NCBI GenBank assembly: GCA_025594325.1
Contig: JANHCV010000011.1
Coordinates: forward strand, 310,001-374,000
DNA length: 64,000 bases
Reading direction: 5' to 3'
Source of the DNA: Blastocladiella emersonii ATCC 22665
Taxonomy: Eukaryota; Fungi; Blastocladiomycota
Shown piece by piece: positions 3,801-33,317 of this stretch (positions are counted from its first letter, which is position 1; each line of letters begins with the position of its first letter). The notes below the pieces were generated by a model. That model did not search any database. It saw nothing but the letters and a program-made list of their open reading frames with translations, and was not told the DNA's origin. A program made the translations under genes and the position numbers.

Positions 3801-5543
3801 GTTGCCTGCGATGTTACTAGATTCGCGCGGCGTGGAGCTGCATTAGTCCCAAGTTGCGCGTGCTGTACGGCGCGGGCAGCGTACTTTAGCACAACACGAT
3901 CAAACGTGCGAAACATGGCCTCGGTGATGTTGTTGGTGTTGCTGAGTGCAGGCGCGATCTCAGTCGAGCCCGTTGCGTCGACGATGTACGCTACACAGGA
4001 GCCACGTGGTCAGTTGCCTTGCACATGTGGTGTGACCCATGCAAACAACGTACGCAGCCACGTCGGCGAGAACCAGTAGCGCTGGAAGTACTCGACCCAG
4101 GACTTGTGCTCGAGGAGAGCGAGCGACGGTTACCGCGAACCAGGTCGATGAGGACATCCACGACACGCTCGCGGAACGCCTTGAGGAACGCGACGAGCGT
4201 TTCCGTCTTGATGTCCGATGAGACGAGGACGGCAACGGGGAGCCCGCGGCTACACAATTTGACAACGGCTGGGTCAGTACAACGCTGTCGCGCGGCGCGT
4301 TGAGAGAGAGGGAGGGCGCGCACCCTTGCGGGTTGAAGATCGTGAGGATCGTCATGGGGATCGAGCCCGAGCTCTTGTGCCGGTGCGAGCTGTCGATTCC
4401 CGTCGGCGCGCCGCGATGGTAGGCGAGCCACCAGAGCGCGGCATTGTCGGTCATGAAGGCGACCGCGAATGGCGCACGGGTGTAGTGGATGACCTTGGCC
4501 GTGTTGTCGGCGACGATCTTGTCCACGACGTCGAGCATGAGCTTGAACTTGTTCGAGTGCGCATGGCTATGGCAGTCGCCGATCTGCTTCTCGCTTGGGC
4601 GGCGGTACTCGGGGATGTTGCGCTCCTTGCAGAAGAACAGGACCTCTACAAGAGGCGGCGGACGGTTCGTTAGACTCGCGACGCGGACAGCGGGGACGCG
4701 TTGGCGGATCGTACCATTGATCAAGGCGCGTCGGGTGAGGCTGAAGTCGAGCTTGCGGCGGTTCATGAACTTCTCGACGAGCGGGGAGATCTTGAGCTGT
4801 TTGAGCGGGATGACGTCGGTGTGGTCGTCGTAGAAGCGGACGAGCGCGGTCTTGAGGTCGCGGGCGTAGATGTAGATGGAGATCGTCACGGGGCATGTAC
4901 GCCGCGGGGCGTTGCCACGCTTGCCGACGGGTAGCGCATGCCACTCGGCGACTGCCTTGGCGTCGTCATCGGAGATCGGGCAGGACGGGCGACTGAGGCA
5001 ACCGTAGCGGGCGCGGTAGACGAGATTGTCGTTGTCGGGCAGGTAGGGGACCGCGAAGGGGATGCACGGGATCGAGATGCGGGGATCTGGGTGCGGGATG
5101 TTGGACGTCTGCGTGATAACGACGTCGGGCGAGAAGTCGGTGCTGTCGAACGTGAAGTCCTGGTGCATGGTGTTGAAGAAGTGCGGGATGTCGGACACGG
5201 GCACGCGGAACGTACGGCTACGAGCGATGCAAGCGGACGTGAGTTTCCCATGGATCGGCCGACACGATGTGCAGGCGTGGTATATCGCTTACGTTGGGTT
5301 GTTAGACTTGGTCGTGTCCCTCAAGGCGACAGCCTTGAACGAGCGGGTCATGTCCTCGCGCTGGGGCGGCCGAGGGGCGACGGCGCTTGCGACAGACCGG
5401 TCCATGTGCGCCTTCATGATGTCGCCGCCCATGAGGAGCATCTGGCCGAGATGATCAGATAGTCGGCCGACGGCCGTGTTGGCGTCGGTAGCGGCGAGGA
5501 GGCGGTCGATCTCGTCAAGGCCGTCGTCTTCATGGCCCGCCAC
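897..5543 (-). mobile_element. Mutator/MULE-like DNA transposase gene with SWIM zinc finger and C-terminal USP-like (papain-fold) peptidase domain; six introns; probably internally deleted
   Basis: Spliced frame rebuilt through GT-AG introns 5218-5292, 4250-4323, 3991-4053, 3817-3884, 1426-1506 and 1231-1293, each restoring frame. MULE-type motifs GIDSSH..MTILTIFNPQGRGLPVAVLVS..ETLVAFLKAF, YFQRYW and TNNITEAMF. SWIM motif YVYLEQHRCTC..QVCAH. Cys box YACPFDALFTAL and His box LCAVVYYH..AHYTSAFVYGGSWWYFDD. No TIR or TSD found. Confidence 0.75.
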
Positions 5544-12699: not shown

Positions 12700-13900
12700 C
12701 ATCACCGTCTCCGTCATCTCCTCAGCCTTCCGTGCATTGTGCTCAACCTTCCTCTCGCACCCTGCACCTGTACGCTTCAACTGCTTTGCGCGTCGCAGCT
12801 TTGCGCGTCTCAGCACAGCGCGTTCCCCTGCTGTGCGATGCGTGCGCTTCAACAAAGAATGGTGCGGTTGGTCGCTCGCGTTGAGTGGCGGCAGGGCACC
12901 GTCATGTGTCACCGGCGCGGCATCAGCAATCGCGCTGCAGCGAGGGCGCCAAGCAAGCTCCTGCATGGCGCTTGAGGCGATGGCCGTCATGGCAGGAGCG
13001 CGAGGCGTGGATCAATGAGTTCGTCTCAGTAAAGCTGTTTGAACCACGCAACGAGTGGTGCGTCCACGATGGCGGCCACGGTGCTTCATGTGTTTTGGGT
13101 TGAGAAGGCGCTCGGCGAGCGATCCGGTGACGCTGGTGTGGAGCCCGCCCCCAATCTAGCCCTTGTCGACCGCCGCAAGGGCGTTTACGATGCGGACGTC
13201 GTCCAGTGCCGCGGAGACAATTGCGCACAAAGAGTGTGCACTCAAACGCGTACGCTTGAGTGTCGGCGACCTTGCCGCCAATTTTTGGGCATTTGGCGCA
13301 GTTGGGGGACTCGTAGCGGTGCGGCCAGAGCTGGTGCAAACAGCTGCGGGTCGGCAGCTGGCCTGCAAGCGCACGGAGCTGGAAGCACGGGAGCGAGTTT
13401 GCGGTGAGGGACTCGCTTGGGTGGATGCGGCGCGTGCTGCCCTGAAGCGCAGCGACAAGGGCTGGGACATTGATGGGGGGGGGACGTGATGCCAGCGGAC
13501 GCGGTCAGAGCGAGCAGCGGGTCGTGTCGCGCGTCGTGCAGGCGGCGGAGAGAGCGTCGCGGGACTGAGTTGAAGTCGCAGCCGCGCCTGCGCGCCGTGA
13601 AGGGCGCATCGAGGTCCACGCGATGGTGGCGGCGGCGATTCACAGCGGGAGATGCGCGGCAGCCCTTGTTGGCGAGCGCGTCGGCCTCCTCATTCTCCAA
13701 GTTCACGGCGTGGCCACGGACCCACTCGATCTGGAGCTCGCGGGCCGCGATGATCCAGCGGAGCACGGCCCACTCGAGCAAGCACGTTGCGCGGACCCGC
13801 ACCCACGCGAACAGCGAGTTCCAGCGATCCGCTCACGAAGACGTCTGCGCCCGCTGCAACGTCTGGCAAACCCACGCCATGGAGCGACCCGTCCGTGTAA
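12700..13900 (-). mobile_element. 5'-truncated, frameshifted non-LTR (LINE-like) retrotransposon fragment: RNase H and C-terminal Cys motif
   Basis: YTDGS at 13885-13899; IEWVRGHAVNLENEEADALA (RNase H C-terminal motif); CAKC..DTQAYAFEC (CxxC..H..C-like with His lost); WRPRC near the end. Pieces lie in different frames and the RNase H middle appears missing. Confidence 0.7.
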
Positions 13901-14945
13901 CGGACCGCAACTCAAAGAGCGGATCTCTCGACCTCGTAGTCCTCACTCGAACTCACGTTCATGGGACCTCGCAAGTCGTTCTCGGTGCAACCGTTGAACT
14001 CGCGCCCACGTCAACGAGCCTGCGCTAGCGGCTCCCAGGTGAACCGCGTCGTTTAAGGATGTGCACCGAACACGGGCTCCGTTCTCCAACACGCACGCCA
14101 AGCACGGGCTCCGTTAGTGGCTTACTGCGCTTCTGCATCTCTCACGCATTCATGTGCTCGGAGTCTCGCGGGCCTGGTCGAGGGTCGGTGCAAAGCGTTA
14201 AACGTTCCGCGATGGCCGAGCGGAACAGCGTCAAGCGACGCGCTTCCGGGGGTTGGGCCGAGGCCGATCACGTGCAAGGCCAGGACGCGTTGCGCCACAG
14301 CAGTCACATGAGAAACGACGCGTCTGTCACGCGTTTTCGGGTCGCTCACGTGCATGGCGCTCACGTGAGCGTCGGCACCCTATCCGGCAGCGACCCGGTC
14401 TAGAAAGAGGGCTTTAGCCCTCGACTTCGTTTGAACTCAATCTTGATGGAAGGCATCATGGGAGAGGCAAGCGAGGCAAAGAAGCTTCATTGGTCACCAG
14501 TCAATTGCGCTAGTTGTAGACGAGGCAATGCCTTCGAGGCGCGTTGCGCCACACCGAATGACACGCGTTGCGCCACACTTGACCCTCACCCATCCGATGA
14601 CGAAACAACTTTGCCCACATCGGTCCTCTCGTTCGAAATCATTGAGTGTGAGCGCGGGATCACAAATGAATGCCTTTAAGCGGACGATTTGCCCTCCGAC
14701 GCGGGTTCGCCAGATCTGGCAACTGGCTTGAACACCAGCTCAATCGGATTGCTGGAGCCAGTGGTCCATGGACGGTGCTGAAATGCGCCGATTTTGCGCT
14801 GTCGATGCTCATTATGTTCAACCTCGACAAGAATGCACGTGGGGCCGCAAGCGTGCTACTTTGACGCAGATCCTTTCGCGGACTAACTTCGCCAGAAGTA
14901 GTGGCTGGCGCGTACGTTTGGCGCGATCAACGCCGGCAGCCATGG

Positions 14946-16011
14946 CGTGCAGCACCAGGCTTACGGCTGCTAAGCGCGTCCCTCATTTGTCTGATCTTTT
15001 TGTTCATAATATGCAAGAAATGGTTTTTACTTCATTCATCTTGAGTTCACTCTCCCTTTCGCACTGACTTGTGAAGACTCTGTCAGGTCCGTGTCGACCC
15101 ACAGCGCACTTGCTGCTCGAAATGTCAAAAGACCGCCTCGTCTCGGTAAAGCAAGAGTTTATTAATCAATTGCATGCAGTCATTCATTGTTGCTTCATGA
15201 GTGTCGAGCAGAGAGTGTCAAGCACGAGGAGCGGGAAGTGGAGCTACGCCACTGCGGCGGGACGAGAGGCCCGCCACCCTGTCGCGCAGTTGTCACGTTT
15301 TTTGAGCTCGAAGCCAAGCTGATCTCTCTCGCTTCCGCGTTGCCAGCGTCCCTCGCCCATCACTCATCACTCCGTTTGGATGTGCTCGACGCTTAAAACT
15401 AGCGTTATGACTCGGCCCAAGGCACCTGCAACGGACCCTCGCCCTTACACGCGCTTGATGGTCTTGCCTCTTACCTCGTACCTCACTTGTTGTGGGCACA
15501 TGTACGTCTCGACCTTGAGTCGCGCCGCTCCGCGCGACACCACCAGAAAGATCATTGATGACGACTTTCATTGCTTCCCGAACGGAGTGATGAGTGATGG
15601 GCGAGGGACGCTGGCAACGCGGAAGCGAGAGAGATCAGCTTGGCTTCGAGCTCAAAAAACGTGACAACTGCGCGACAGGGTGGCGGGCCTCTCGTCCCGC
15701 CGCAGTGGCGTAGCTCCACTTCCCGCTCCTCGTGCTTGACACTCTCTGCTCGACACTCATGAAGCAACAATGAATGACTGCATGCAATTGATTAATAAAC
15801 TCTTGCTTTACCGAGACGAGGCGGTCTTTTGACATTTCGAGCAGCAAGTGCGCTGTGGGTCGACACGGACCTGACAGAGTCTTCACAAGTCAGTGCGAAA
15901 GGGAGAGTGAACTCAAGATGAATGAAGTAAAAACCATTTCTTGCATATTATGAACAAAAAGATCAGACAAATGAGGGACGCGCTTAGCAGCCGTAGGCAT
16001 GGTGCTGCACG
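14946..16011. repeat. Long inverted repeat: arms 14946-15376 and 15581-16011 (431 bp), 204-bp spacer
   Basis: Direct comparison shows reverse-complement identity apart from 2 mismatches near the outer end. The ORF track shows the same 83-aa ORF on opposite strands (15071-15322 + and 15635-15886 -). Confidence 0.95.
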
Positions 16012-17939
16012 TACGCCGAAAGGTCGTACGCGGCGTGCGAATGCTGAGCAGCCGCCGCGGCCGCGTCGAAGCTTGCGTCGGGAGCACCGTGGAGGAAGCT
16101 GAACGAGTCGGTGGCGTAGTGTGCGCCCTGGCTGCCGGCGTGGATCGCGCCAAACGCGTCGCCGTGTCCCGCAGCGAATGCATCGCCGCCAGCAGTACCA
16201 TGGCCAGCGAAACCGCTGCCGATGGAACCGTGGCCGTCGAAACCGCCGTTGCCGCCGAAATGGCCCTGACCGGCCGCAGAACCATGACCAGCGAAGCCGC
16301 CATTGACCTGGCCCCCCGCGGAACCGTGACCACCAAACCCACCACCGAGGCCACCCCCGCCGATGATCTGGCCGTGCGCGTCGACGTTTCCGTGCGCCCC
16401 GCCGCCGATGGAACCCTGGCCGCCAATGGAACCCTGGCCGCCGATCGAACCCTGGCCGCCGGCGTGCAGGCCGCCGTTCGCCGAGCCCGCGCCCGCGCCA
16501 AAACCGCCTCCGCCGATGATCTGGCCGTGCGCGTCGACATTCCCGTGCGCGCCGCCGCCAATGGAGCCCTGGCCGCCCGAGTGCGCGCCCGCGCCCGCTC
16601 CGAAGCCGCCGCCCAGGCCGCCGGTGGCCGATCCCGAGCCATGCGCGCCCGCGCCCGCCCCGAAACCGCCTCCGCCGATGATCTGGCCGTGCGCGTCGAC
16701 GTTTCCGTGCGCGCCGCCGCCGATAGTGCCCTGGCCGCCCGCGTGAAGGCCGCCATTCGCTGATCCAGCGCCGTGCGCGCCCGCGCCCGCTCCGAAGCCG
16801 CCGCCCAGGCCGCCGGTGGCCGATCCCGAGCCATGCGCGCCCGCGCCCGCCCCGAAACCGCCTCCGCCGATGATCTGGCCGTGCGCGTCGACATTTCCGT
16901 GCGCGCCGCCGCCGATAGTGCCCTGGCCGCCCGCGTGAAGGCCGCCATTCGCTGATCCAGCGCCGTGCGCGCCCGCGCCCGCTCCGAAGCCGCCGCCCAG
17001 GCCGCCGGTGGCCGATCCCGAGCCATGCGCGCCCGCGCCCGCCCCGAAACCGCCTCCGCCGATGATCTGGCCGTGCGCGTCGACATTTCCGTGCGCGCCG
17101 CCGCCGATAGTGCCCTGGCCGCCCGCGTGAAGGCCGCCATTCGCTGATCCAGCGCCGTGCGCGCCCGCGCCCATTCCGAAGCCGCCGCCCAGGCCCCCGG
17201 TGGCCGATCCGGAGCCGTGCGCGCCCGCGCCCGCCCCGAAACCGCCTCCGCCAATGATCTGGCCGTGCGCGTCGATGTTGCCGTGCGCGCCGCCGCCAAT
17301 AGAGCCCTGGCCGCCCGCGTGCGCGCCCGCGCCCGTCCCGAAGCCGCCGCCCAGGCCGCCGGTGGCCGATCCCGAGCCGTGCGCACCCGCGCCCGCCCCG
17401 AAACCGCCACCAATGGACCCGTGAGCATCGATATCGCCGCGGCCGCCGGCCCCGAAGCCGCCATTCGCCGACCCAGAGCCGTGAAGGCCGCCATTCGCGG
17501 ACCCGCCCGCGTGCAGGCCTCCGTTGGCCATGCCCGAGCCATGTCCAGCGAATCCACCGCCGACCTGGCCCCCAGAGTGAGCTCCGCCGCCGATGAACCC
17601 GCCCGCGTTGCCGCCGCCAATGAGCTGACCTCCGGCGTCAATGTTTCCGTGAGCCGACGCGTTTCCACCGGCCCCAGCCGACGCCCCGCCGCCCACGTGT
17701 CCCGAGCCACCGGCCGAGACGTTTCCATGAGCCGAACCACCGGCCGAGACGTTTCCGTGAGCCGAACCGCCGCCCGAGATGTTGCCCGAGGCGTTCCCGC
17801 TCGCCGAACCACCGCCGTGGACCGCGCCACCGTTGTGGATCGCGCCGCCGCCGTTCTGGGCCGCGCCGCCGTTGTAGACATGGCCGCCCATCATGTTGCC
17901 GAGGAGGGCCTTCTTCATCTGGAGGAGACCAAGCGTCAT
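15984..17939 (-). CDS. Gly/Ala/His-rich low-complexity repeat protein, 651 aa, intronless, with 64-aa internal repeats
   Basis: Long ORF with typical codon usage; ATG preceded by catcaac; TATAAA on the minus strand at 18161-18166; 192-bp tandem units. Confidence 0.8.
   Translation of the reverse strand: MTLGLLQMKKALLGNMMGGHVYNGGAAQNGGGAIHNGGAVHGGGSASGNASGNISGGGSAHGNVSAGGSAHGNVSAGGSGHVGGGASAGAGGNASAHGNIDAGGQLIGGGNAGGFIGGGAHSGGQVGGGFAGHGSGMANGGLHAGGSANGGLHGSGSANGGFGAGGRGDIDAHGSIGGGFGAGAGAHGSGSATGGLGGGFGTGAGAHAGGQGSIGGGAHGNIDAHGQIIGGGGFGAGAGAHGSGSATGGLGGGFGMGAGAHGAGSANGGLHAGGQGTIGGGAHGNVDAHGQIIGGGGFGAGAGAHGSGSATGGLGGGFGAGAGAHGAGSANGGLHAGGQGTIGGGAHGNVDAHGQIIGGGGFGAGAGAHGSGSATGGLGGGFGAGAGAHGAGSANGGLHAGGQGTIGGGAHGNVDAHGQIIGGGGFGAGAGAHGSGSATGGLGGGFGAGAGAHSGGQGSIGGGAHGNVDAHGQIIGGGGFGAGAGSANGGLHAGGQGSIGGQGSIGGQGSIGGGAHGNVDAHGQIIGGGGLGGGFGGHGSAGGQVNGGFAGHGSAAGQGHFGGNGGFDGHGSIGSGFAGHGTAGGDAFAAGHGDAFGAIHAGSQGAHYATDSFSFLHGAPDASFDAAAAAAQHSHAAYDLSAYVQHHAYGC
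16719..17294 (-). repeat. 3 x 192-bp coding tandem repeat (64 aa) inside the Gly-rich gene, with degenerate flanking copies
   Basis: Units start at ~16719, 16911 and 17103. Identical shadow ORFs at 16773-16955 and 16965-17147 confirm the 192-bp period. Confidence 0.9.
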
Positions 17940-18160
17940 GTTGATGCTGTTGGGAGTTGAATAGAGTTGGTGGTGAAGTGTCGCGACGCCGTGGAGAACA
18001 GCGAGCGCGAGGTGTAGAGCGAAGGGCTAGAGTGGATTACTTGCGCCAGGCAAGGAGAAATGCTGTACAGTGGTTGGGGAGGGAGGGAATCTCAGCGGGT
18101 CTACCGATGAGGTTGTCTGGGATGTTTGGTGTCGACAAAGTGAGGGCGGGGCTCAGGCTC

Positions 18161-18166
18161 TTTATA
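18161..18166 (-). promoter_or_regulatory. Candidate TATA box of the Gly-rich gene
   Basis: TATAAA ~220 nt upstream of the ATG in a GC-rich background. Confidence 0.4.
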
Positions 18167-19834
18167 CTAGGGGAGTTGGCGCTGCGAGTTGTGAACTGGA
18201 GGTGCACAAGAAAATTCCGTTGAGGAGCAGCAGGGAGCGCTGATTAATTTCGAGTGGCTCAGCAAGCCCGCAGCGGCCGCTGCGGTTGCCGAGATGAACG
18301 AGCGAGATGACTTTATAACCGCGCGACGGCGCACTTTCGCAACGGCGGGGCTGGTGCTGTTGGCTGGCAGTCATCCGTTGAGGCTCGCTCGCAATAGCAA
18401 TTCCGATGACAAGGATGCGCGCAACGGCCACGTGTAATGACGAGCGCTTTTGATTTGCTCGATTCGGGCGACGGAGACCTTGTGCATGAGTACTCGAGCG
18501 CAACGCGTGCTCAAAACGCGTGAAAGCGTCGCGACTCAAGCCCAGAGGACGTGGTCGCGAGCTGGAACAGGCTTGGAGCGGCTTTCGACTTCCGACTTGC
18601 GTCGAAAACTTCGGCGTTGCACCGACCTCGTTGTGAAAGACTTGAGCTTCAAAGTGATGCGAAGGCTGAGTTCCACAAGAACACGATTTAAAATGTATTT
18701 AAAATTTGTCTCTAGTCCTTCCACGCAGTTGGGAAAGCAGGCATCGAGACAGAGGTCGCCATGGCGGACCTGGGCGGGCGCGGAGGAGCGTCGGCCGCGC
18801 CCATGCCGCTGGGCGACGCGAGCGAGTTCGCAAAGTCGCTTGGCGCGCTCAGGGCGGGGAGCTGCTGTCCAGTTGTTGAAAGCCGGAAATTGGCGAGCAG
18901 CAGACTCTGGCCATCCACGGCGTGAGAGCGAGCGGAAGCAGGCTGTCCATGGCCGGGACGAGCTGTTTACGTGAGGGCTGAGTGTGTCGTGTGGAAGCAT
19001 AGGATCTAGCCGTCCTGGTACGGCGAACGCGTGAGGCGCGAGATCCCGACACGGACGTGATCCGCGTTTTGATCGCGCAACAATCCGTGGCCGCGAGCAA
19101 GTGGCAGGAGCAGGACAGAGTTCGATAACCGCGCTCAGTTCTTCCCTCCTGGTTTCCAATCTGACCCATGTGCTGTTCCGACACGACTGAGGCCCAGGGG
19201 GAGAGCGTGATGCAAAAGTGTTCGCAGGAAGCCCAGCCTGATCGACGTCGCGCCCAACTTCCTTGATCGCTGCAGGTCAGCTAGCACACTCGGGCGAACA
19301 TGTCCGACGAAGCCTTGTCCAGGCGCCGCGAGCGAGGAGCGCTCGCGCCTCGTCCGCCAACAACTCTGCCACTCGGACGTGTACGGCCGGTGGTAAGGGA
19401 ACGCTCAGTAACAACAGTCTCACCTTATCGTGTGTTCGACGTGAGTGCACGGCCGAGGAATCAGGCCCTCTCGAGGCGGCAGCTCGTAGTGCGTTTCGCG
19501 CGACTTGGCCGGCTGGGCGACGACGACAAGCTCCATCTACGTGCTAGATCTCTCGCAGTACGCGTCAATCGGTATCCCGGACACACAACAACGAGCGGAA
19601 GCTCCGGGCGAGGACCGGCCGTCGCGCTCGAGCGACGCGTCGCGCACCGCGCCACTCAGGTGATGGGCGCTGTGCACGTGCGCCGTGTTTTGCTTTGCCG
19701 CTCCGCTCTGCTCCGCTCGCCCTGCCGCCGCGGCCGCGCGCCCTTGACAAAAACGATCTCGCCTCTCACCCGCTGCTACGGATCAAGGGTCCGCTCTCCA
19801 GTCACTGCAACGCATCAACCCCCCACGCACCACC

Positions 19835-21328
19835 ATGTCCGCGGCCTTTGCCTCTGCGCGCGACAAGCTGCGCAACATCAAGCCGCCGTCGCGCGGCGTG
19901 GTGATCTTCACGACGGTGGTCGGGACCTTCTTCGGGCTCGTGTACCGCGACCGGCGCCTGACCGAGCAGGTGCACGAGGAGCTGCGCTTGCGCGCGGCCG
20001 AGCTGGCGAACCAGCCGCTGGCGTCGACGGACCGCGTGCGCAAGGTCGCCGTGTACCTGATGCGGCCGCACCCGGACGACTCGATCCGCACGTCGCGCCA
20101 GATCTTTGCAAAGTACATCAAGCCCGTGTTCGACGCGGCCGCGCTCGACTACGACCTGGTCGAGGCGTTCGAGCCGGGCGCCGTCGCCCGCCACACGCAG
20201 CAGACGCTGGCCAAGAAGCAGCGGTACGTGCGGTGGACCGACGAGGACCGCATGCGCGCGCTCGTCCTGAGTACTGCCCAGGACGACCTCCAGTACTTTT
20301 ACCGCATGCAGGACTACGACGCGTACGTCGCCCTCGGACGCAAGCCGTTCGAGGAGGTGCTCGTCGGGTACCAGGCCGGCCTGCAGCAGGCGCGCGACGA
20401 GGCCGTCGAGGACGGCGTTGTCGCTGCGGCCACCGCGCAGGCGACCGCGGGCCGGTCCACGAGCTGGCTCCGCTCGTTGTTCGGCGGTTCCTCCTCCTCG
20501 CCCGCCCCCGCCGAGTCCTCGTCGACCGCCGCCGAGCACCCGATCGACACCATCTCGGGTTACCCGCTATCGCTGCCTGCCGTAGCGTACCTGCCGCTGT
20601 TCACGCTCAAGGGCCTCGCCAACTTCCCGAAGAAGATGTACCGGTGGTTCAACAAGCACGAGCAGGCGCGTTTGCTGGGGACCATGGCGCTGCAGATCGC
20701 CGAGGCCGCGGGCACGCGCCCGCTGTCGCCCGTCGACTTCGAGCTCGGCGTCACCGAGTTCGGCATGCAGCTCGCGGCCAAGGCCGCAGGTAAGCCTGTG
20801 GGCCACGCCGACGACTCGGAGCCGACGCTCGTCCAGGCGTACGCCGACTTCTGGCCCGCGCCGGTCCCCGCCCACGTCAAGGTCGCCGAGGCCGTCCAGA
20901 AGCTCAGCGCCAAGTACGAGGCCGAGCAGAAGGCCGCTGTCGACGCGGTCTCGGCCCAGTCGATCCTGTCGTCCGCCGGCACCCAGCAGCTGCAGGCGCC
21001 GCACCTCGCCACGGCTCCCGCGGCTCCTGCCGCTGAGGGCGCGGCCGAGGCCGGCGTCGAGTCGGGCTTCGCGCCCGAGCCCGCGACGCCCGAGGAGCCC
21101 GTGTTCGAGGACCCGTACGCCAAGAACGACGAGGCCAAGGCGGCGGCGGCCGCGAAGGAGGACAAGGCCAAGGCGGCCGAGGACCGCGAGACGGAGCGCG
21201 AGCGCAAGGAGAAGACCAAGAGCGAGCTGCTCAAGCGGTACTTTGTGCCCAAGGCCGTGGACGCGCGCGAGCTGGTCGAGGTGCGCGCGCCCATCTACGA
21301 TTTCGGCGACAAGTCGCTGGTCGTCTGA
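19835..21328 (+). CDS. TIM54: Mitochondrial import inner-membrane translocase subunit Tim54
   Basis: KPPSRGVVIF..VYRDRR, LANQPL..RKVAVYL..PDDSIR..FAKYIKPVFDAAALDYDLV, and LANFPKKMYRWFNK match Tim54 motifs. Intronless, 497 aa. Confidence 0.85.
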   Translation: MSAAFASARDKLRNIKPPSRGVVIFTTVVGTFFGLVYRDRRLTEQVHEELRLRAAELANQPLASTDRVRKVAVYLMRPHPDDSIRTSRQIFAKYIKPVFDAAALDYDLVEAFEPGAVARHTQQTLAKKQRYVRWTDEDRMRALVLSTAQDDLQYFYRMQDYDAYVALGRKPFEEVLVGYQAGLQQARDEAVEDGVVAAATAQATAGRSTSWLRSLFGGSSSSPAPAESSSTAAEHPIDTISGYPLSLPAVAYLPLFTLKGLANFPKKMYRWFNKHEQARLLGTMALQIAEAAGTRPLSPVDFELGVTEFGMQLAAKAAGKPVGHADDSEPTLVQAYADFWPAPVPAHVKVAEAVQKLSAKYEAEQKAAVDAVSAQSILSSAGTQQLQAPHLATAPAAPAAEGAAEAGVESGFAPEPATPEEPVFEDPYAKNDEAKAAAAAKEDKAKAAEDRETERERKEKTKSELLKRYFVPKAVDARELVEVRAPIYDFGDKSLVV

Positions 21329-32274: not shown

Positions 32275-33317
32275 ACGGGCAGAGCATAAATCATTTTTGA
32301 TCCTCTTGTATTCATGTTTTGTGTGCGGGCGAGAGGGCAGCGGTGAGGCGCGGGGTGAAAATTTCCCAAGTCCCTCGAGCCCACAGCAACGGGGTCACCT
32401 GAGCGCGGGTGACCTCGCACACACGCTGAGCCACTGCCCGTGCGCGCGCTCCGCCCCGGTCCCTGCCGCCGTGCCGCCCGCTGCGGGGGAGGGAGTATAT
32501 AAGCCTGCGCGCCCTCGCCCTCCAGTTTTGCTCACCATCGACTTTACTCTTAGGATCTTGTATCTAGGAGATATCTACCTTGTGTTTCTCACACAAGACA
32601 CCATACGAACGCTGGACGACGATGCATGGATTCGGCTCCGAAAAGGGAGGCGGGCACGCCTGCGGGCGCCCTCGTGCGCTCGCCGTGCCATCGAGGATCT
32701 TGGCCGCCCTCCCATTCCTTGGGCGCGCCGTGGAGCCGAATCGTTCTGACAGCGCTATGTTGCTACTTTGGCCCTCTTGTCCGTGTCCTGCCCCGTCAGC
32801 GACTGCGTTGCTACTTTGGCTCTGCTCCTTCCACGAACTAGCTGCGAGTCCTTGCCAAGCGTCGCCCGAAACGGCCAATTTCTCTGGCCGTCTGCCGTTG
32901 TCGTTCGTGCATGTTGCTCGTCTCATCGCTTGTCCTCCGAGCACTTTCATAACGGCCCTTGACGGAAATCTCGGCACCGTACGGCCTCGCACGATGGGGC
33001 GTTGTCCTCGCCGTAGTCCTCGCGGCGACCCCGTCGACCACGGCGAAGCCCATGAGTTGGCCGGCATCGCGTCCCGTCCCGCGGCTGATCTCGGCGCCGT
33101 CCGACTCCTGGCGCTTTCGTCCAGCTTTTAAAAGAGAAGACTCCGAGAGAGGAGCGTTCTTGGCAGCTGAGGGAGTTGAGTCGAAGGCGCGTCGGTCGCA
33201 ACGGTGAGTGTTCGACGCGTCGCTCTCGCTGCGTGGCGTCGGCTTCGCTCCCTCCCTCTCCCCCTCTTCAAAAGCAGCCCTCGCTCCGTCAGCCCATGCA
33301 TCCGCCCGCACGCAACC

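What the first reader, a model, noticed from the sequence alone, without database searches (positions are those of the whole stretch)
14915..16156. Gene 3' end duplicated in inverted orientation: candidate hairpin-RNA (siRNA) locus
The last codons, stop and ~400 bp downstream of the Gly-rich gene are copied head-to-head 204 bp away (431-bp arms, 2 mismatches). The copy extends 32 bp further (14915-14946 matches 16125-16156 with 2 mismatches) across an exact in-frame 114-nt deletion, reading TFGAINAGSHG-VQHQAYGC*. All mismatches are in the coding part while the non-coding ~400 bp is identical, hinting at gene conversion between arms. Read-through transcription would fold into >400 bp dsRNA complementary to the gene's own mRNA, giving possible autoregulation or silencing. 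A GACTAAC..CAG acceptor at 14881-14895 just upstream suggests the copy may also be spliced into another transcript. The structure marks the TE island/gene border.
Basis: partly seen in the sequence, partly recalled or inferred. Interest (0 to 1): 0.75.

Follow-up and report, generated by a model that had tools for sequence, protein, structure and literature searches.

The report
Inverted copy of a gene tail
A water fungus (most likely Blastocladiella emersonii) carries a real, near-perfect back-to-front copy of the last codons and downstream flank of an orphan glycine-rich gene just behind that gene. It is one of many mirror-image duplications in this genome, and nothing yet shows that it makes a silencing hairpin RNA.

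Summary
Arms 14946-15379 and 15578-16011 (434 nt) are inverted copies around a 198-nt unique spacer. A 33-nt outer block continues the match across an in-frame 114-nt gap with 2-nt (CG) microhomology. The structure is single-copy in the 32.65-Mb genome. It is not a transposon and not a retrocopy, and an assembly artefact is very unlikely. It lies between the last transposon (ends about 14424) and an unannotated, homologue-less Gly/His-rich ORF (15984-17939, minus strand).

My reading is a small DNA-level inverted partial duplication, a dead gene-tail fragment whose frame closes 24 codons upstream. Its 415-nt core is identical and its outer edge is diverged (4 mismatches in 59 nt against 0 in 403, p=2.4e-4). 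That fits arm-to-arm gene conversion or error-prone synthesis at the breakpoint.

The scan found this kind of structure before on other DNA of the same genome. I verified two cases: a 267-nt inverted tail of the essential CCT1 gene, and a large palindrome on the same contig.

The siRNA reading stays untested:
- Four Argonaute loci exist.
- No RdRP and no canonical Dicer were detected.
- A poly(A)-like signal sits in the first 75 nt of each arm, so a hairpin needs terminator read-through.

Interest is modest.

The parts
12783..14424 (.). Multi-copy transposon fragment, the last element of the TE island. It carries an RNase H-like ORF on the minus strand at 13242-13802.
   Evidence: At least 40 matching loci in the genome share a common terminus at about 14424-14429. 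RNase_H PF00075 scores E=2.1e-5.
14425..14914 (.). Unique left flank that looks non-coding (GC 54%). It shows no homology to the gene.
   Evidence: No other genomic copy beyond query position about 530. No blastn or tblastx similarity to 15990-19400.
14882..14895 (+).
   Evidence: The motif is present but not enriched (5 observed against 2.7 expected). The gene-homologous frame hits TAG at 14899-14901.
14915..14947 (+). Outer homology block of the copy, coding-derived (TFGAINAGSHG), with 2 mismatches to the parent.
14946..15379 (+). Left arm: an inverted copy of the last 8 codons, the stop (TAA 14971-14973) and 406 nt of 3' flank.
14986..15046 (+). Poly(A)-signal-like AT-rich stretch in the left arm (70-73% AT; ATAATA, AAGAAA, T5 tracts), in sense orientation for plus-strand transcripts.
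   Evidence: The function is inferred from the yeast poly(A) signal model and was not tested.
15380..15577 (.). Unique, asymmetric 198-nt spacer that would form the loop.
   Evidence: It occurs only once in the window and in the genome.
15578..16011 (-). Right arm, the parental sequence: 3' flank, stop (15984-15986) and last 8 codons of the Gly/His-rich ORF.
15911..15971 (-). Poly(A)-signal-like AT-rich stretch 15-75 nt after the parental stop codon.
   Evidence: inference.
16012..16123 (-). Core of the 114-nt (38-codon) parental segment that the copy lacks. The boundaries are ambiguous by a 2-nt CG microhomology and are not GT..AG.
16124..16156 (-). Parental counterpart of the outer block (AFGAIHAGSQG).
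15984..17939 (-). Parent ORF: 651 aa, 40% Gly, 8% His, with 64-aa (192-nt) modules. It is single-copy, unannotated and has no homologue.

Best explanation
This is a genuine, single-copy, DNA-level inverted partial duplication. About 0.47 kb was copied in reverse orientation and now lies 198 bp downstream of its source: 59 nt of coding tail in two blocks, the stop codon, and 406 nt of 3' flank of an orphan Gly/His-rich ORF. The breakpoints carry no long homology, and the internal 114-nt skip uses a 2-nt microhomology. This points to replication or repair template switching (fold-back type). It does not point to transposition, retroposition or recombination between repeats (inferred). The copy is a dead fragment.

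The pattern of an identical 415-nt core with a diverged outer edge has two best explanations. One is arm-to-arm gene conversion that stops short of the indel. The other is error-prone synthesis next to the breakpoint when the copy formed. The locus is the small end of a spectrum of inverted duplications, from 0.27 kb to tens of kb, that this genome carries.

The locus can give a long hairpin RNA only if transcription reads through the poly(A)-like signal that lies at the outer end of each arm. Any small-RNA output is therefore probably low and incidental.
For: - The inverted repeat and its internal gap are confirmed.
- The repeat matches only itself in the genome, and the parent ORF has no paralogue.
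- No homology continues left of 14915, and 490 bp of unique DNA separate the copy from the nearest TE. The copy is therefore not a TE-truncated full gene copy.
- The gap boundaries are not GT..AG, there is no poly(A) tail, and the copy runs 406 nt past the stop. It is therefore not a retrocopy.
- The homologous frame is closed 24 codons upstream.
- Mismatches cluster at the edge: 4 in 59 nt against 0 in 403 nt, Fisher p=2.4e-4.
- At two of the four mismatches, both in the outer block, the parent keeps the residues of its own internal LHAGGQG-type motif, so at those sites the copy is the derived one.
- Other inverted duplications were verified in the same genome. One is a palindrome with a 2,200-nt spacer and 100% identical arms at C3:89500-99400. 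The other is a 267-nt, 100% identical inverted copy of the CCT1 gene tail 2.27 kb behind that gene.
- The assembly appears to be the B. emersonii ATCC 22665 assembly: 21 contigs, about 186x PacBio HiFi with 10.5-kb mean read length (PMC9730499). The neighbouring Tim54 ORF is recorded in NCBI on a contig of 1,500,809 bases, the length of C3. Single reads would therefore span the whole 1.07-kb structure together with its unique flanks.
Against: - No reads, no second strain and no related genome could be inspected, so neither the age nor the conversion history is shown directly.
- Gene conversion cannot be separated from breakpoint-associated mutagenesis without an outgroup.
- Polishing with 65-bp Illumina reads could in principle homogenise near-identical arms, although it left the two mismatches at 14958 and 14961.
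- Absence of function is not shown. Argonautes are present, and in a lineage without RdRP, hairpins are a natural dsRNA source.
Confidence: 0.7

Rival explanations
1. Functional hairpin-RNA (endo-siRNA) locus. Read-through transcripts of the Gly-rich gene, or plus-strand transcripts coming from the TE island, fold into a stem of more than 430 bp. The stem is diced and loaded into Argonaute and silences the parent mRNA through the roughly 90-120 nt it shares with the stem base.
For: - The predicted stem is near-perfect (-1103 kcal/mol).
- Four intact Piwi-domain loci are present.
- RdRP was not detected and is reported absent from Blastocladiomycota (PMC4290597; PMC5796279). Hairpins or convergent transcripts would then be the only endogenous dsRNA sources.
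- Gene-derived hpRNAs that silence their parent genes are established in Drosophila (PMC10317233 and PMC10292708, listed).
Against: - No expression or small-RNA data are available.
- A poly(A)-like signal lies 15-75 nt inside each arm and points inward, so normal transcripts probably end before the loop.
- No canonical Dicer was detected. The only find was one single-RNase-III plus dsRBD gene of Rnt1/MRPL44 type.
- With zero differences in the stem, no covariation signal is possible.
- A similar inverted tail sits behind essential CCT1, where self-silencing would be harmful.
- The parent ORF is not annotated and has no homologues.
Confidence: 0.15
2. Duplicated terminator acting as an insulator or fail-safe terminator. 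The left arm supplies a sense-oriented poly(A) signal that stops TE-island transcription before it runs antisense into the gene. Any read-through hairpin is cut by the Rnt1-like RNase III, as in yeast Rnt1-dependent termination.
For: - Each arm starts, from the outside, with the same AT-rich poly(A)-like block pointing inward.
- The repeat lies exactly between the last TE and the first ORF.
- One RNase III plus dsRBD gene is present.
Against: This is purely inferential. The poly(A) signal has not been validated in this organism. The structure is single-copy and very young, or recently converted, so there is no sign of selection.
Confidence: 0.08
3. Assembly or library fold-back artefact.
For: Near-perfect palindromes are a known artefact class. 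I could not inspect any reads.
Against: - The locus lies about 325 kb inside a 1.5-Mb contig, with different unique flanks on each side.
- The spacer is a 198-nt asymmetric sequence.
- The arms differ by 4-5 substitutions and a 114-nt indel.
- At 1.07 kb, the structure is about ten times shorter than the mean HiFi read at about 186x depth.
Confidence: 0.03
4. Foldback or MITE-like transposon, or a processed retrocopy.
For: Long terminal inverted arms around a short loop resemble foldback elements.
Against: The sequence is single-copy in the genome. The right arm is continuous with the ORF. No target-site duplication was seen by eye in the flanks, no poly(A) tail is present, and the gap is not an intron.
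Confidence: 0.02

Closest known systems
Inverted segmental duplications (palindromes) homogenised by arm-to-arm gene conversion, such as human Y-chromosome palindromes and the other palindromes of this genome
   Same: Two inverted arms surround a unique spacer. The core is identical while an edge is diverged. The sequence is single-copy and not a TE. Other examples were verified in the same genome.
   Different: This one is very small (0.43-kb arms) and holds only a gene tail plus flank. Conversion is inferred from the identity profile alone.
Drosophila hairpin-RNA (hpRNA) loci and plant proto-miRNA genes born by inverted duplication of their target gene
   Same: An inverted repeat derived from a gene, with near-perfect complementarity to the parent, lies in a genome that has Argonautes and no RdRP.
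   Different: No transcript or small RNA has been shown. The copy sits directly behind its parent and shares the parent's own terminator. No canonical Dicer was detected. The part shared with the mature mRNA is probably only about 100 nt.
Replication-based template-switch insertions (FoSTeS/MMBIR-type inverted insertions)
   Same: A nearby segment is inserted in inverted orientation. The junctions lack long homology, there is an internal skip at a 2-nt microhomology, and substitutions cluster near the breakpoint.
   Different: The mechanism is inferred from the end product only. The ancestral allele is unknown.
Rnt1-dependent fail-safe transcription termination in budding yeast
   Same: A downstream RNA hairpin could be cut by an RNase III plus dsRBD enzyme, and one such gene is present.
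   Different: Rnt1 substrates are short capped stem-loops, not 430-bp duplexes. Nothing was tested here.

Membership tests
hpRNA / endo-siRNA hairpin locus | Long inverted repeat with sequence identity to a target gene | tested here: met
   434-nt arms, 99% identical, include the last 8 codons and the 3' flank of the parent ORF.
hpRNA / endo-siRNA hairpin locus | Both arms transcribed on one RNA | not testable with these tools
   No RNA data are available. A poly(A)-like signal 15-75 nt inside each arm argues against efficient read-through (inference).
hpRNA / endo-siRNA hairpin locus | Dicer-dependent 20-24-nt small RNAs from the arms | not testable with these tools
   No small-RNA data are available. 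No literature on small RNAs of Blastocladiella was found.
hpRNA / endo-siRNA hairpin locus | RNAi machinery encoded in the genome (Argonaute and Dicer) | tested here: inconclusive
   Piwi domains occur at 4 loci with open frames of 759-1111 aa. The RNase III searches found only one single-domain RNase III plus dsRBD gene. The Dicer_dimer hit is a dsRBD protein. RdRP was not found. The sensitivity of six-frame searches for intron-bearing genes is unknown.
Gene-converted inverted duplication (palindrome) | Inverted arms around a unique spacer, single-copy, not a mobile element | tested here: met
Gene-converted inverted duplication (palindrome) | Patchy identity: an identical tract beside a diverged homologous tract | tested here: met
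   0 mismatches in 403 non-coding nt against 4 in 59 coding nt plus a 114-nt indel, p=2.4e-4.
Gene-converted inverted duplication (palindrome) | Arms more alike within the species than orthologous arms between species (direct proof of conversion) | not testable with these tools
Foldback / MITE transposon | Multiple copies with target-site duplications | tested here: not met
   The repeat matches only itself in 32.65 Mb, and the right arm is continuous with the ORF.
Processed retrocopy | Intron loss, a poly(A) tail, and an end at the mRNA 3' end | tested here: not met
   The 114-nt gap has no GT..AG ends. There is no A-tract at the inner end. The copy extends 406 nt past the stop.
Assembly fold-back artefact | Perfect symmetry without a spacer, typically at a contig end and unsupported by spanning reads | tested here: not met
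   The locus is in the contig interior, with an asymmetric 198-nt spacer, substitutions, an indel and unique flanks. Read support itself was not testable.

The most novel reading that the evidence does not exclude
Small inverted copies of gene tails placed just behind their own genes are a recurrent feature of this Argonaute-bearing fungus, which lacks RdRP and apparently lacks Dicer. Here the gene is the Gly-rich ORF. I verified the CCT1 case, and other scan notes, which I did not verify, report ABCA and chitin-synthase cases. On this reading, these copies are the organism's way of making gene-specific dsRNA. That would be the first endogenous hpRNA-type regulation described in early-diverging zoosporic fungi.
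Probability: 0.1. Interest if true: 0.6.

Novelty: new member of a known kind. Interest (0 to 1): 0.3.

Why it matters
As a single locus it is an ordinary, if neat, example of a young inverted partial duplication. Its value is as a marker. This genome repeatedly makes inverted duplications of all sizes and keeps them identical, including small ones that place an antisense gene tail behind the gene. Blastocladiomycota have Argonautes but no RdRP. These loci are therefore the obvious first places to look with small-RNA sequencing for endogenous RNAi triggers in zoosporic fungi. They are also natural substrates for studying gene conversion and template-switch repair in an early-diverging fungus.

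Tried and rejected
- **Retrocopy:** rejected. The gap ends are not GT..AG, there is no poly(A) tail, and the flank is copied far past the likely poly(A) site.
- **Foldback or MITE:** rejected, because the sequence is single-copy.
- **TE-truncated full second gene copy:** rejected. No homology lies left of 14915, and 490 bp of unique DNA precede the TE.
- **Known RNA family in the repeat:** none. Rfam gave only U3 at 32538-32754, and no tRNA was found.
- **Splicing of the copy into another transcript:** the motif is not enriched, and the homologous frame hits TAG right after the acceptor. The 99-aa alternative-frame ORF and the 94-aa spacer ORF are not in the protein collection.
- **Identity of the parent protein:** no Pfam match. 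The exact sequence, tried with four alternative starts, is absent from the collection. No homologue was found for residues 545-651. The protein atlas gave only a 0.82 chance-level hit.
- **Dicer and RdRP searches:**, followed up. They found only dsRBD proteins and one Rnt1/MRPL44-like RNase III.
- **Neighbouring giant palindrome:** my first guess at its position (C3:152600-162500) was wrong. I found it at C3:89500-99400.
- **Searches held back:** I did not run the large HMMER representative search or any structure prediction, because the parent protein's function does not decide the question.
Full report
**Observation**

The repeat finder on 13500-17500 reports an inverted repeat with arms 14946-15379 and 15578-16011. 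The arms are 434 nt long and 99% complementary, with 198 nt between them. A second pair, 14915-14947 / 16124-16156, is 33 nt long and 94% complementary.

The pairwise alignment and a base-by-base script place the differences:
- 14958/15999 and 14961/15996, both in the last codons.
- The ragged inner edge at 15377/15580.
- 14929/16142 and 14943/16128, in the outer block.

Positions 14962-15376 (415 nt) are identical. The two blocks overlap by the dinucleotide CG, so the copy lacks exactly 114 nt (38 codons) of the parent.

This is the only inverted repeat of 60 nt or more in the window. A search of the whole 32.65-Mb genome with 14880-16160 returns only the locus itself and its own arms.

**Organism and assembly**

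The window is eukaryotic and fungal. It holds a U3 snoRNA, a Tim54 gene at 19835-21328, and copia-type reverse transcriptase.

Earlier notes of this scan name Blastocladiella emersonii. The published assembly of strain ATCC 22665 has 21 contigs, as this genome does. It was built from about 186x PacBio HiFi reads of mean length 10.5 kb with the La Jolla Assembler and polished with Pilon (PMC9730499). The Tim54 ORF is recorded in NCBI on a contig of 1,500,809 bases, which is the length of contig C3.

I take the identification as very likely. I note that the paper gives 34.27 Mb against 32.65 Mb here.

**Is it an artefact?**

The locus lies about 325 kb inside a 1.5-Mb contig. Its two flanks are different and unique, or TE-derived. 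The spacer is asymmetric, and the arms differ by substitutions and an indel.

The whole structure is 1.07 kb, about a tenth of a mean HiFi read. A fold-back chimera would not produce this, and a de Bruijn assembler would not need to guess it. I put the artefact at about 3%.

**What surrounds it**

To the left, a multi-copy element (at least 40 loci) occupies 12783 to about 14424. All long copies share that terminus. It carries an RNase H-like ORF on the minus strand.

Between that terminus and the copy lie 490 bp (14425-14914) of unique DNA with 54% GC. This stretch has no blastn or tblastx similarity to the gene or to the gene's upstream region. The copy is therefore not a whole second gene cut short by a transposon. 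It was a partial copy from the start, or it lost the rest by a clean deletion.

To the right is the parent ORF, 15984-17939 on the minus strand:
- It is 651 aa long, with 40% Gly, 17% Ala and 8% His, and is built of 64-aa (192-nt) modules.
- It has no Pfam domain and no paralogue in the genome.
- The protein atlas gives no convincing look-alike.
- No homologue was found for its non-repetitive C-terminal 107 residues.
- Its exact sequence, tried with four alternative starts, is not in the protein collection, whereas the neighbouring Tim54 ORF is.
- Its codon-position GC (0.76/0.67/0.79) has the ordering expected of coding sequence, and this frame fits best of the three on its strand. However, GC3 is far below the 0.95 of Tim54.

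I treat it as a plausible but unproven orphan gene.

**What the copy is**

- The gene-homologous frame of the copy is closed by TAG at 14899-14901, 24 codons before its stop.
- The 114-nt gap cannot be an intron under any of the three placements that the CG microhomology allows.
- The inner end of the copy has no A-tract, and the copy continues 406 nt past the stop. It was therefore made from DNA and not from mRNA.
- It is single-copy, so it is not a foldback or MITE element.
- The junctions show no long homology. An inverted insertion of a nearby segment, an internal jump at a 2-nt microhomology, and substitutions clustered next to the breakpoint are what replication or repair template switching leaves behind. 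This mechanism is an inference from the end product.

**The identity profile**

There are four substitutions in the 59 aligned coding nucleotides and none in 403 non-coding nucleotides (Fisher p=2.4e-4). Two explanations fit:
- (i) The duplication is older than its core suggests, and arm-to-arm gene conversion keeps the core identical. The conversion stops short of the 114-nt heterology.
- (ii) The substitutions and the skip arose during error-prone synthesis near the breakpoint when the copy formed.

At the two outer-block differences the parent keeps H and Q, as in its own internal LHAGGQG-type motif. The changes at those two sites therefore lie in the copy, which fits both explanations. Three of the four changes are transversions, and none is the C-to-T type expected from methylation- or RIP-like processes. 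Without an outgroup the two explanations cannot be separated.

**Context in the genome**

Notes of this scan report many palindromes with identical cores in this genome. They also report three other small inverted copies of gene ends, at CCT1, an ABCA transporter and a chitin synthase. These notes are leads and not evidence, so I checked two myself.

- At C3:89500-99400 there is a palindrome with a 2,200-nt spacer and 100% identical arms that run to the ends of the fetched stretch.
- The CCT1 (TCP-1 alpha) gene at C18:1337781-1339343 (minus strand, 902 bits) has a plus-strand match to the last 80 profile positions at C18:1335199-1335447. The repeat finder shows 267-nt arms at 100% identity, 2,273 nt apart, with a diverged 37-nt inverted pair further in.

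The locus under study is therefore one small member of a recurrent class in this genome, and the scan has found this kind of thing before on other DNA. One such copy sits behind an essential chaperonin gene. That argues that these copies are tolerated by-products and not evolved self-silencers.

**Could it make a silencing hairpin?**

Folded as one RNA, 14900-16170 forms an uninterrupted stem of more than 430 bp with a 198-nt loop (MFE -1103 kcal/mol). This follows trivially from the repeat.

The machinery is partly present:
- Four loci have full-length Piwi domains in open frames of 759-1111 aa.
- RdRP was not found. This agrees with the literature for the phylum: funRNA lists Allomyces with 8 Argonautes, 1 Dicer and 0 RdRP (PMC4290597; PMC5796279).
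- A canonical Dicer was not detected. PF00636 and PF14622 find only one gene, with a single RNase III domain plus a dsRBD, of Rnt1/MRPL44 type. The weak Dicer_dimer hit is a multi-dsRBD protein.
- These six-frame searches have unknown sensitivity for intron-bearing genes, and the assembly is 71-82% BUSCO-complete. The absence of Dicer is therefore only suggestive.

The transcript geometry also matters. The most AT-rich part of the arm (70-73% AT) lies 15-75 nt after the stop and contains ATAATA, AAGAAA and flanking T5 tracts. A second AT-rich patch lies at 165-215 nt. By analogy with yeast poly(A) signals, which is an inference, the mRNA probably ends well inside the arm. Because the arm is duplicated, a transcript entering from either side meets this signal in sense orientation first. 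A hairpin therefore needs terminator read-through of about 1 kb. Only about 100 nt at the stem base would match the mature mRNA.

I found no paper on small RNAs in Blastocladiella.

**The proposed splice acceptor**

ACTAAC followed by CAG is present at 14882-14895. The pattern ACTAAC-N(3-25)-YAG occurs 5 times in the window against 2.7 expected by chance, and 14 of 100 shuffles reach 5. The homologous frame stops two codons after the acceptor. Upstream there is only unique, low-GC, ORF-poor DNA and a transposon. This part of the reading is unsupported.

**Verdict**

The structure is real and precisely as described. The best-supported explanation (about 0.7) is a small inverted partial duplication made by template-switch repair or replication. 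Its core is kept identical, or was made identical, by gene conversion, or the duplication is simply very young. It is one of many inverted duplications in this genome.

The hairpin-siRNA reading remains possible (about 0.15) but has no positive evidence beyond the geometry and the Argonautes. A terminator or insulator role (about 0.08) is an untested alternative. The closest known functional analogues are the gene-derived hpRNA loci of Drosophila (PMC10317233, PMC10292708). The closest structural analogues are gene-converted palindromes.

Noticed in passing
G000:C18:1335211-1338017 (L027:1712-1978 and 4252-4518): The essential CCT1 (TCP-1 alpha) gene has a 267-nt, 100% identical inverted copy of its 3' end 2,273 nt behind it. 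A diverged 37-nt inverted pair lies further in. This is a second gene-tail inverted repeat in the genome.
   Followed up: partly
G000:C3:89500-99400 (L024): A palindrome with a 2,200-nt unique spacer and 100% identical arms that run to both ends of the fetched 9.9 kb. It lies about 215 kb from the locus on the same contig.
   Followed up: partly
whole genome G000 (C17:1404132, C17:1586553, C11:2504843, C20:476549; C1:2959691-2960185): There are four Piwi/Argonaute loci, two of them with identical scores 182 kb apart on C17. No RdRP and no two-RNase-III Dicer were detected, only one single-RNase-III plus dsRBD gene. This could mean Argonautes without a canonical Dicer, or it could be a limit of search sensitivity.
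   Followed up: partly
window 14240-14424: The terminal 185 nt of the multi-copy element also occur alone at 12 or more loci at 97-99% identity. The element ends in a 16-nt perfect stem-loop (GAGGGC-TTTA-GCCCTC, about 14410-14425). Its class and orientation are unresolved, because the RNase H-like ORF is on the opposite strand.
   Followed up: partly
window 15984-17939 (-): The 651-aa Gly/His-rich ORF is absent from the NCBI-derived protein collection, although its neighbour Tim54 is present. An overlapping 663-aa ORF in another frame of the same strand (15890-17881) runs through the stop into the arm.
   Followed up: partly
window 32538-32754 (+): A U3 snoRNA gene (Rfam RF00012, 67 bits, full length).
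   Followed up: no
window 14706-14727 and 14888-14909: A 22-nt direct repeat at 73% identity, 182 nt apart, in the unique left flank, overlapping the acceptor-like motif. It is probably chance.
   Followed up: no
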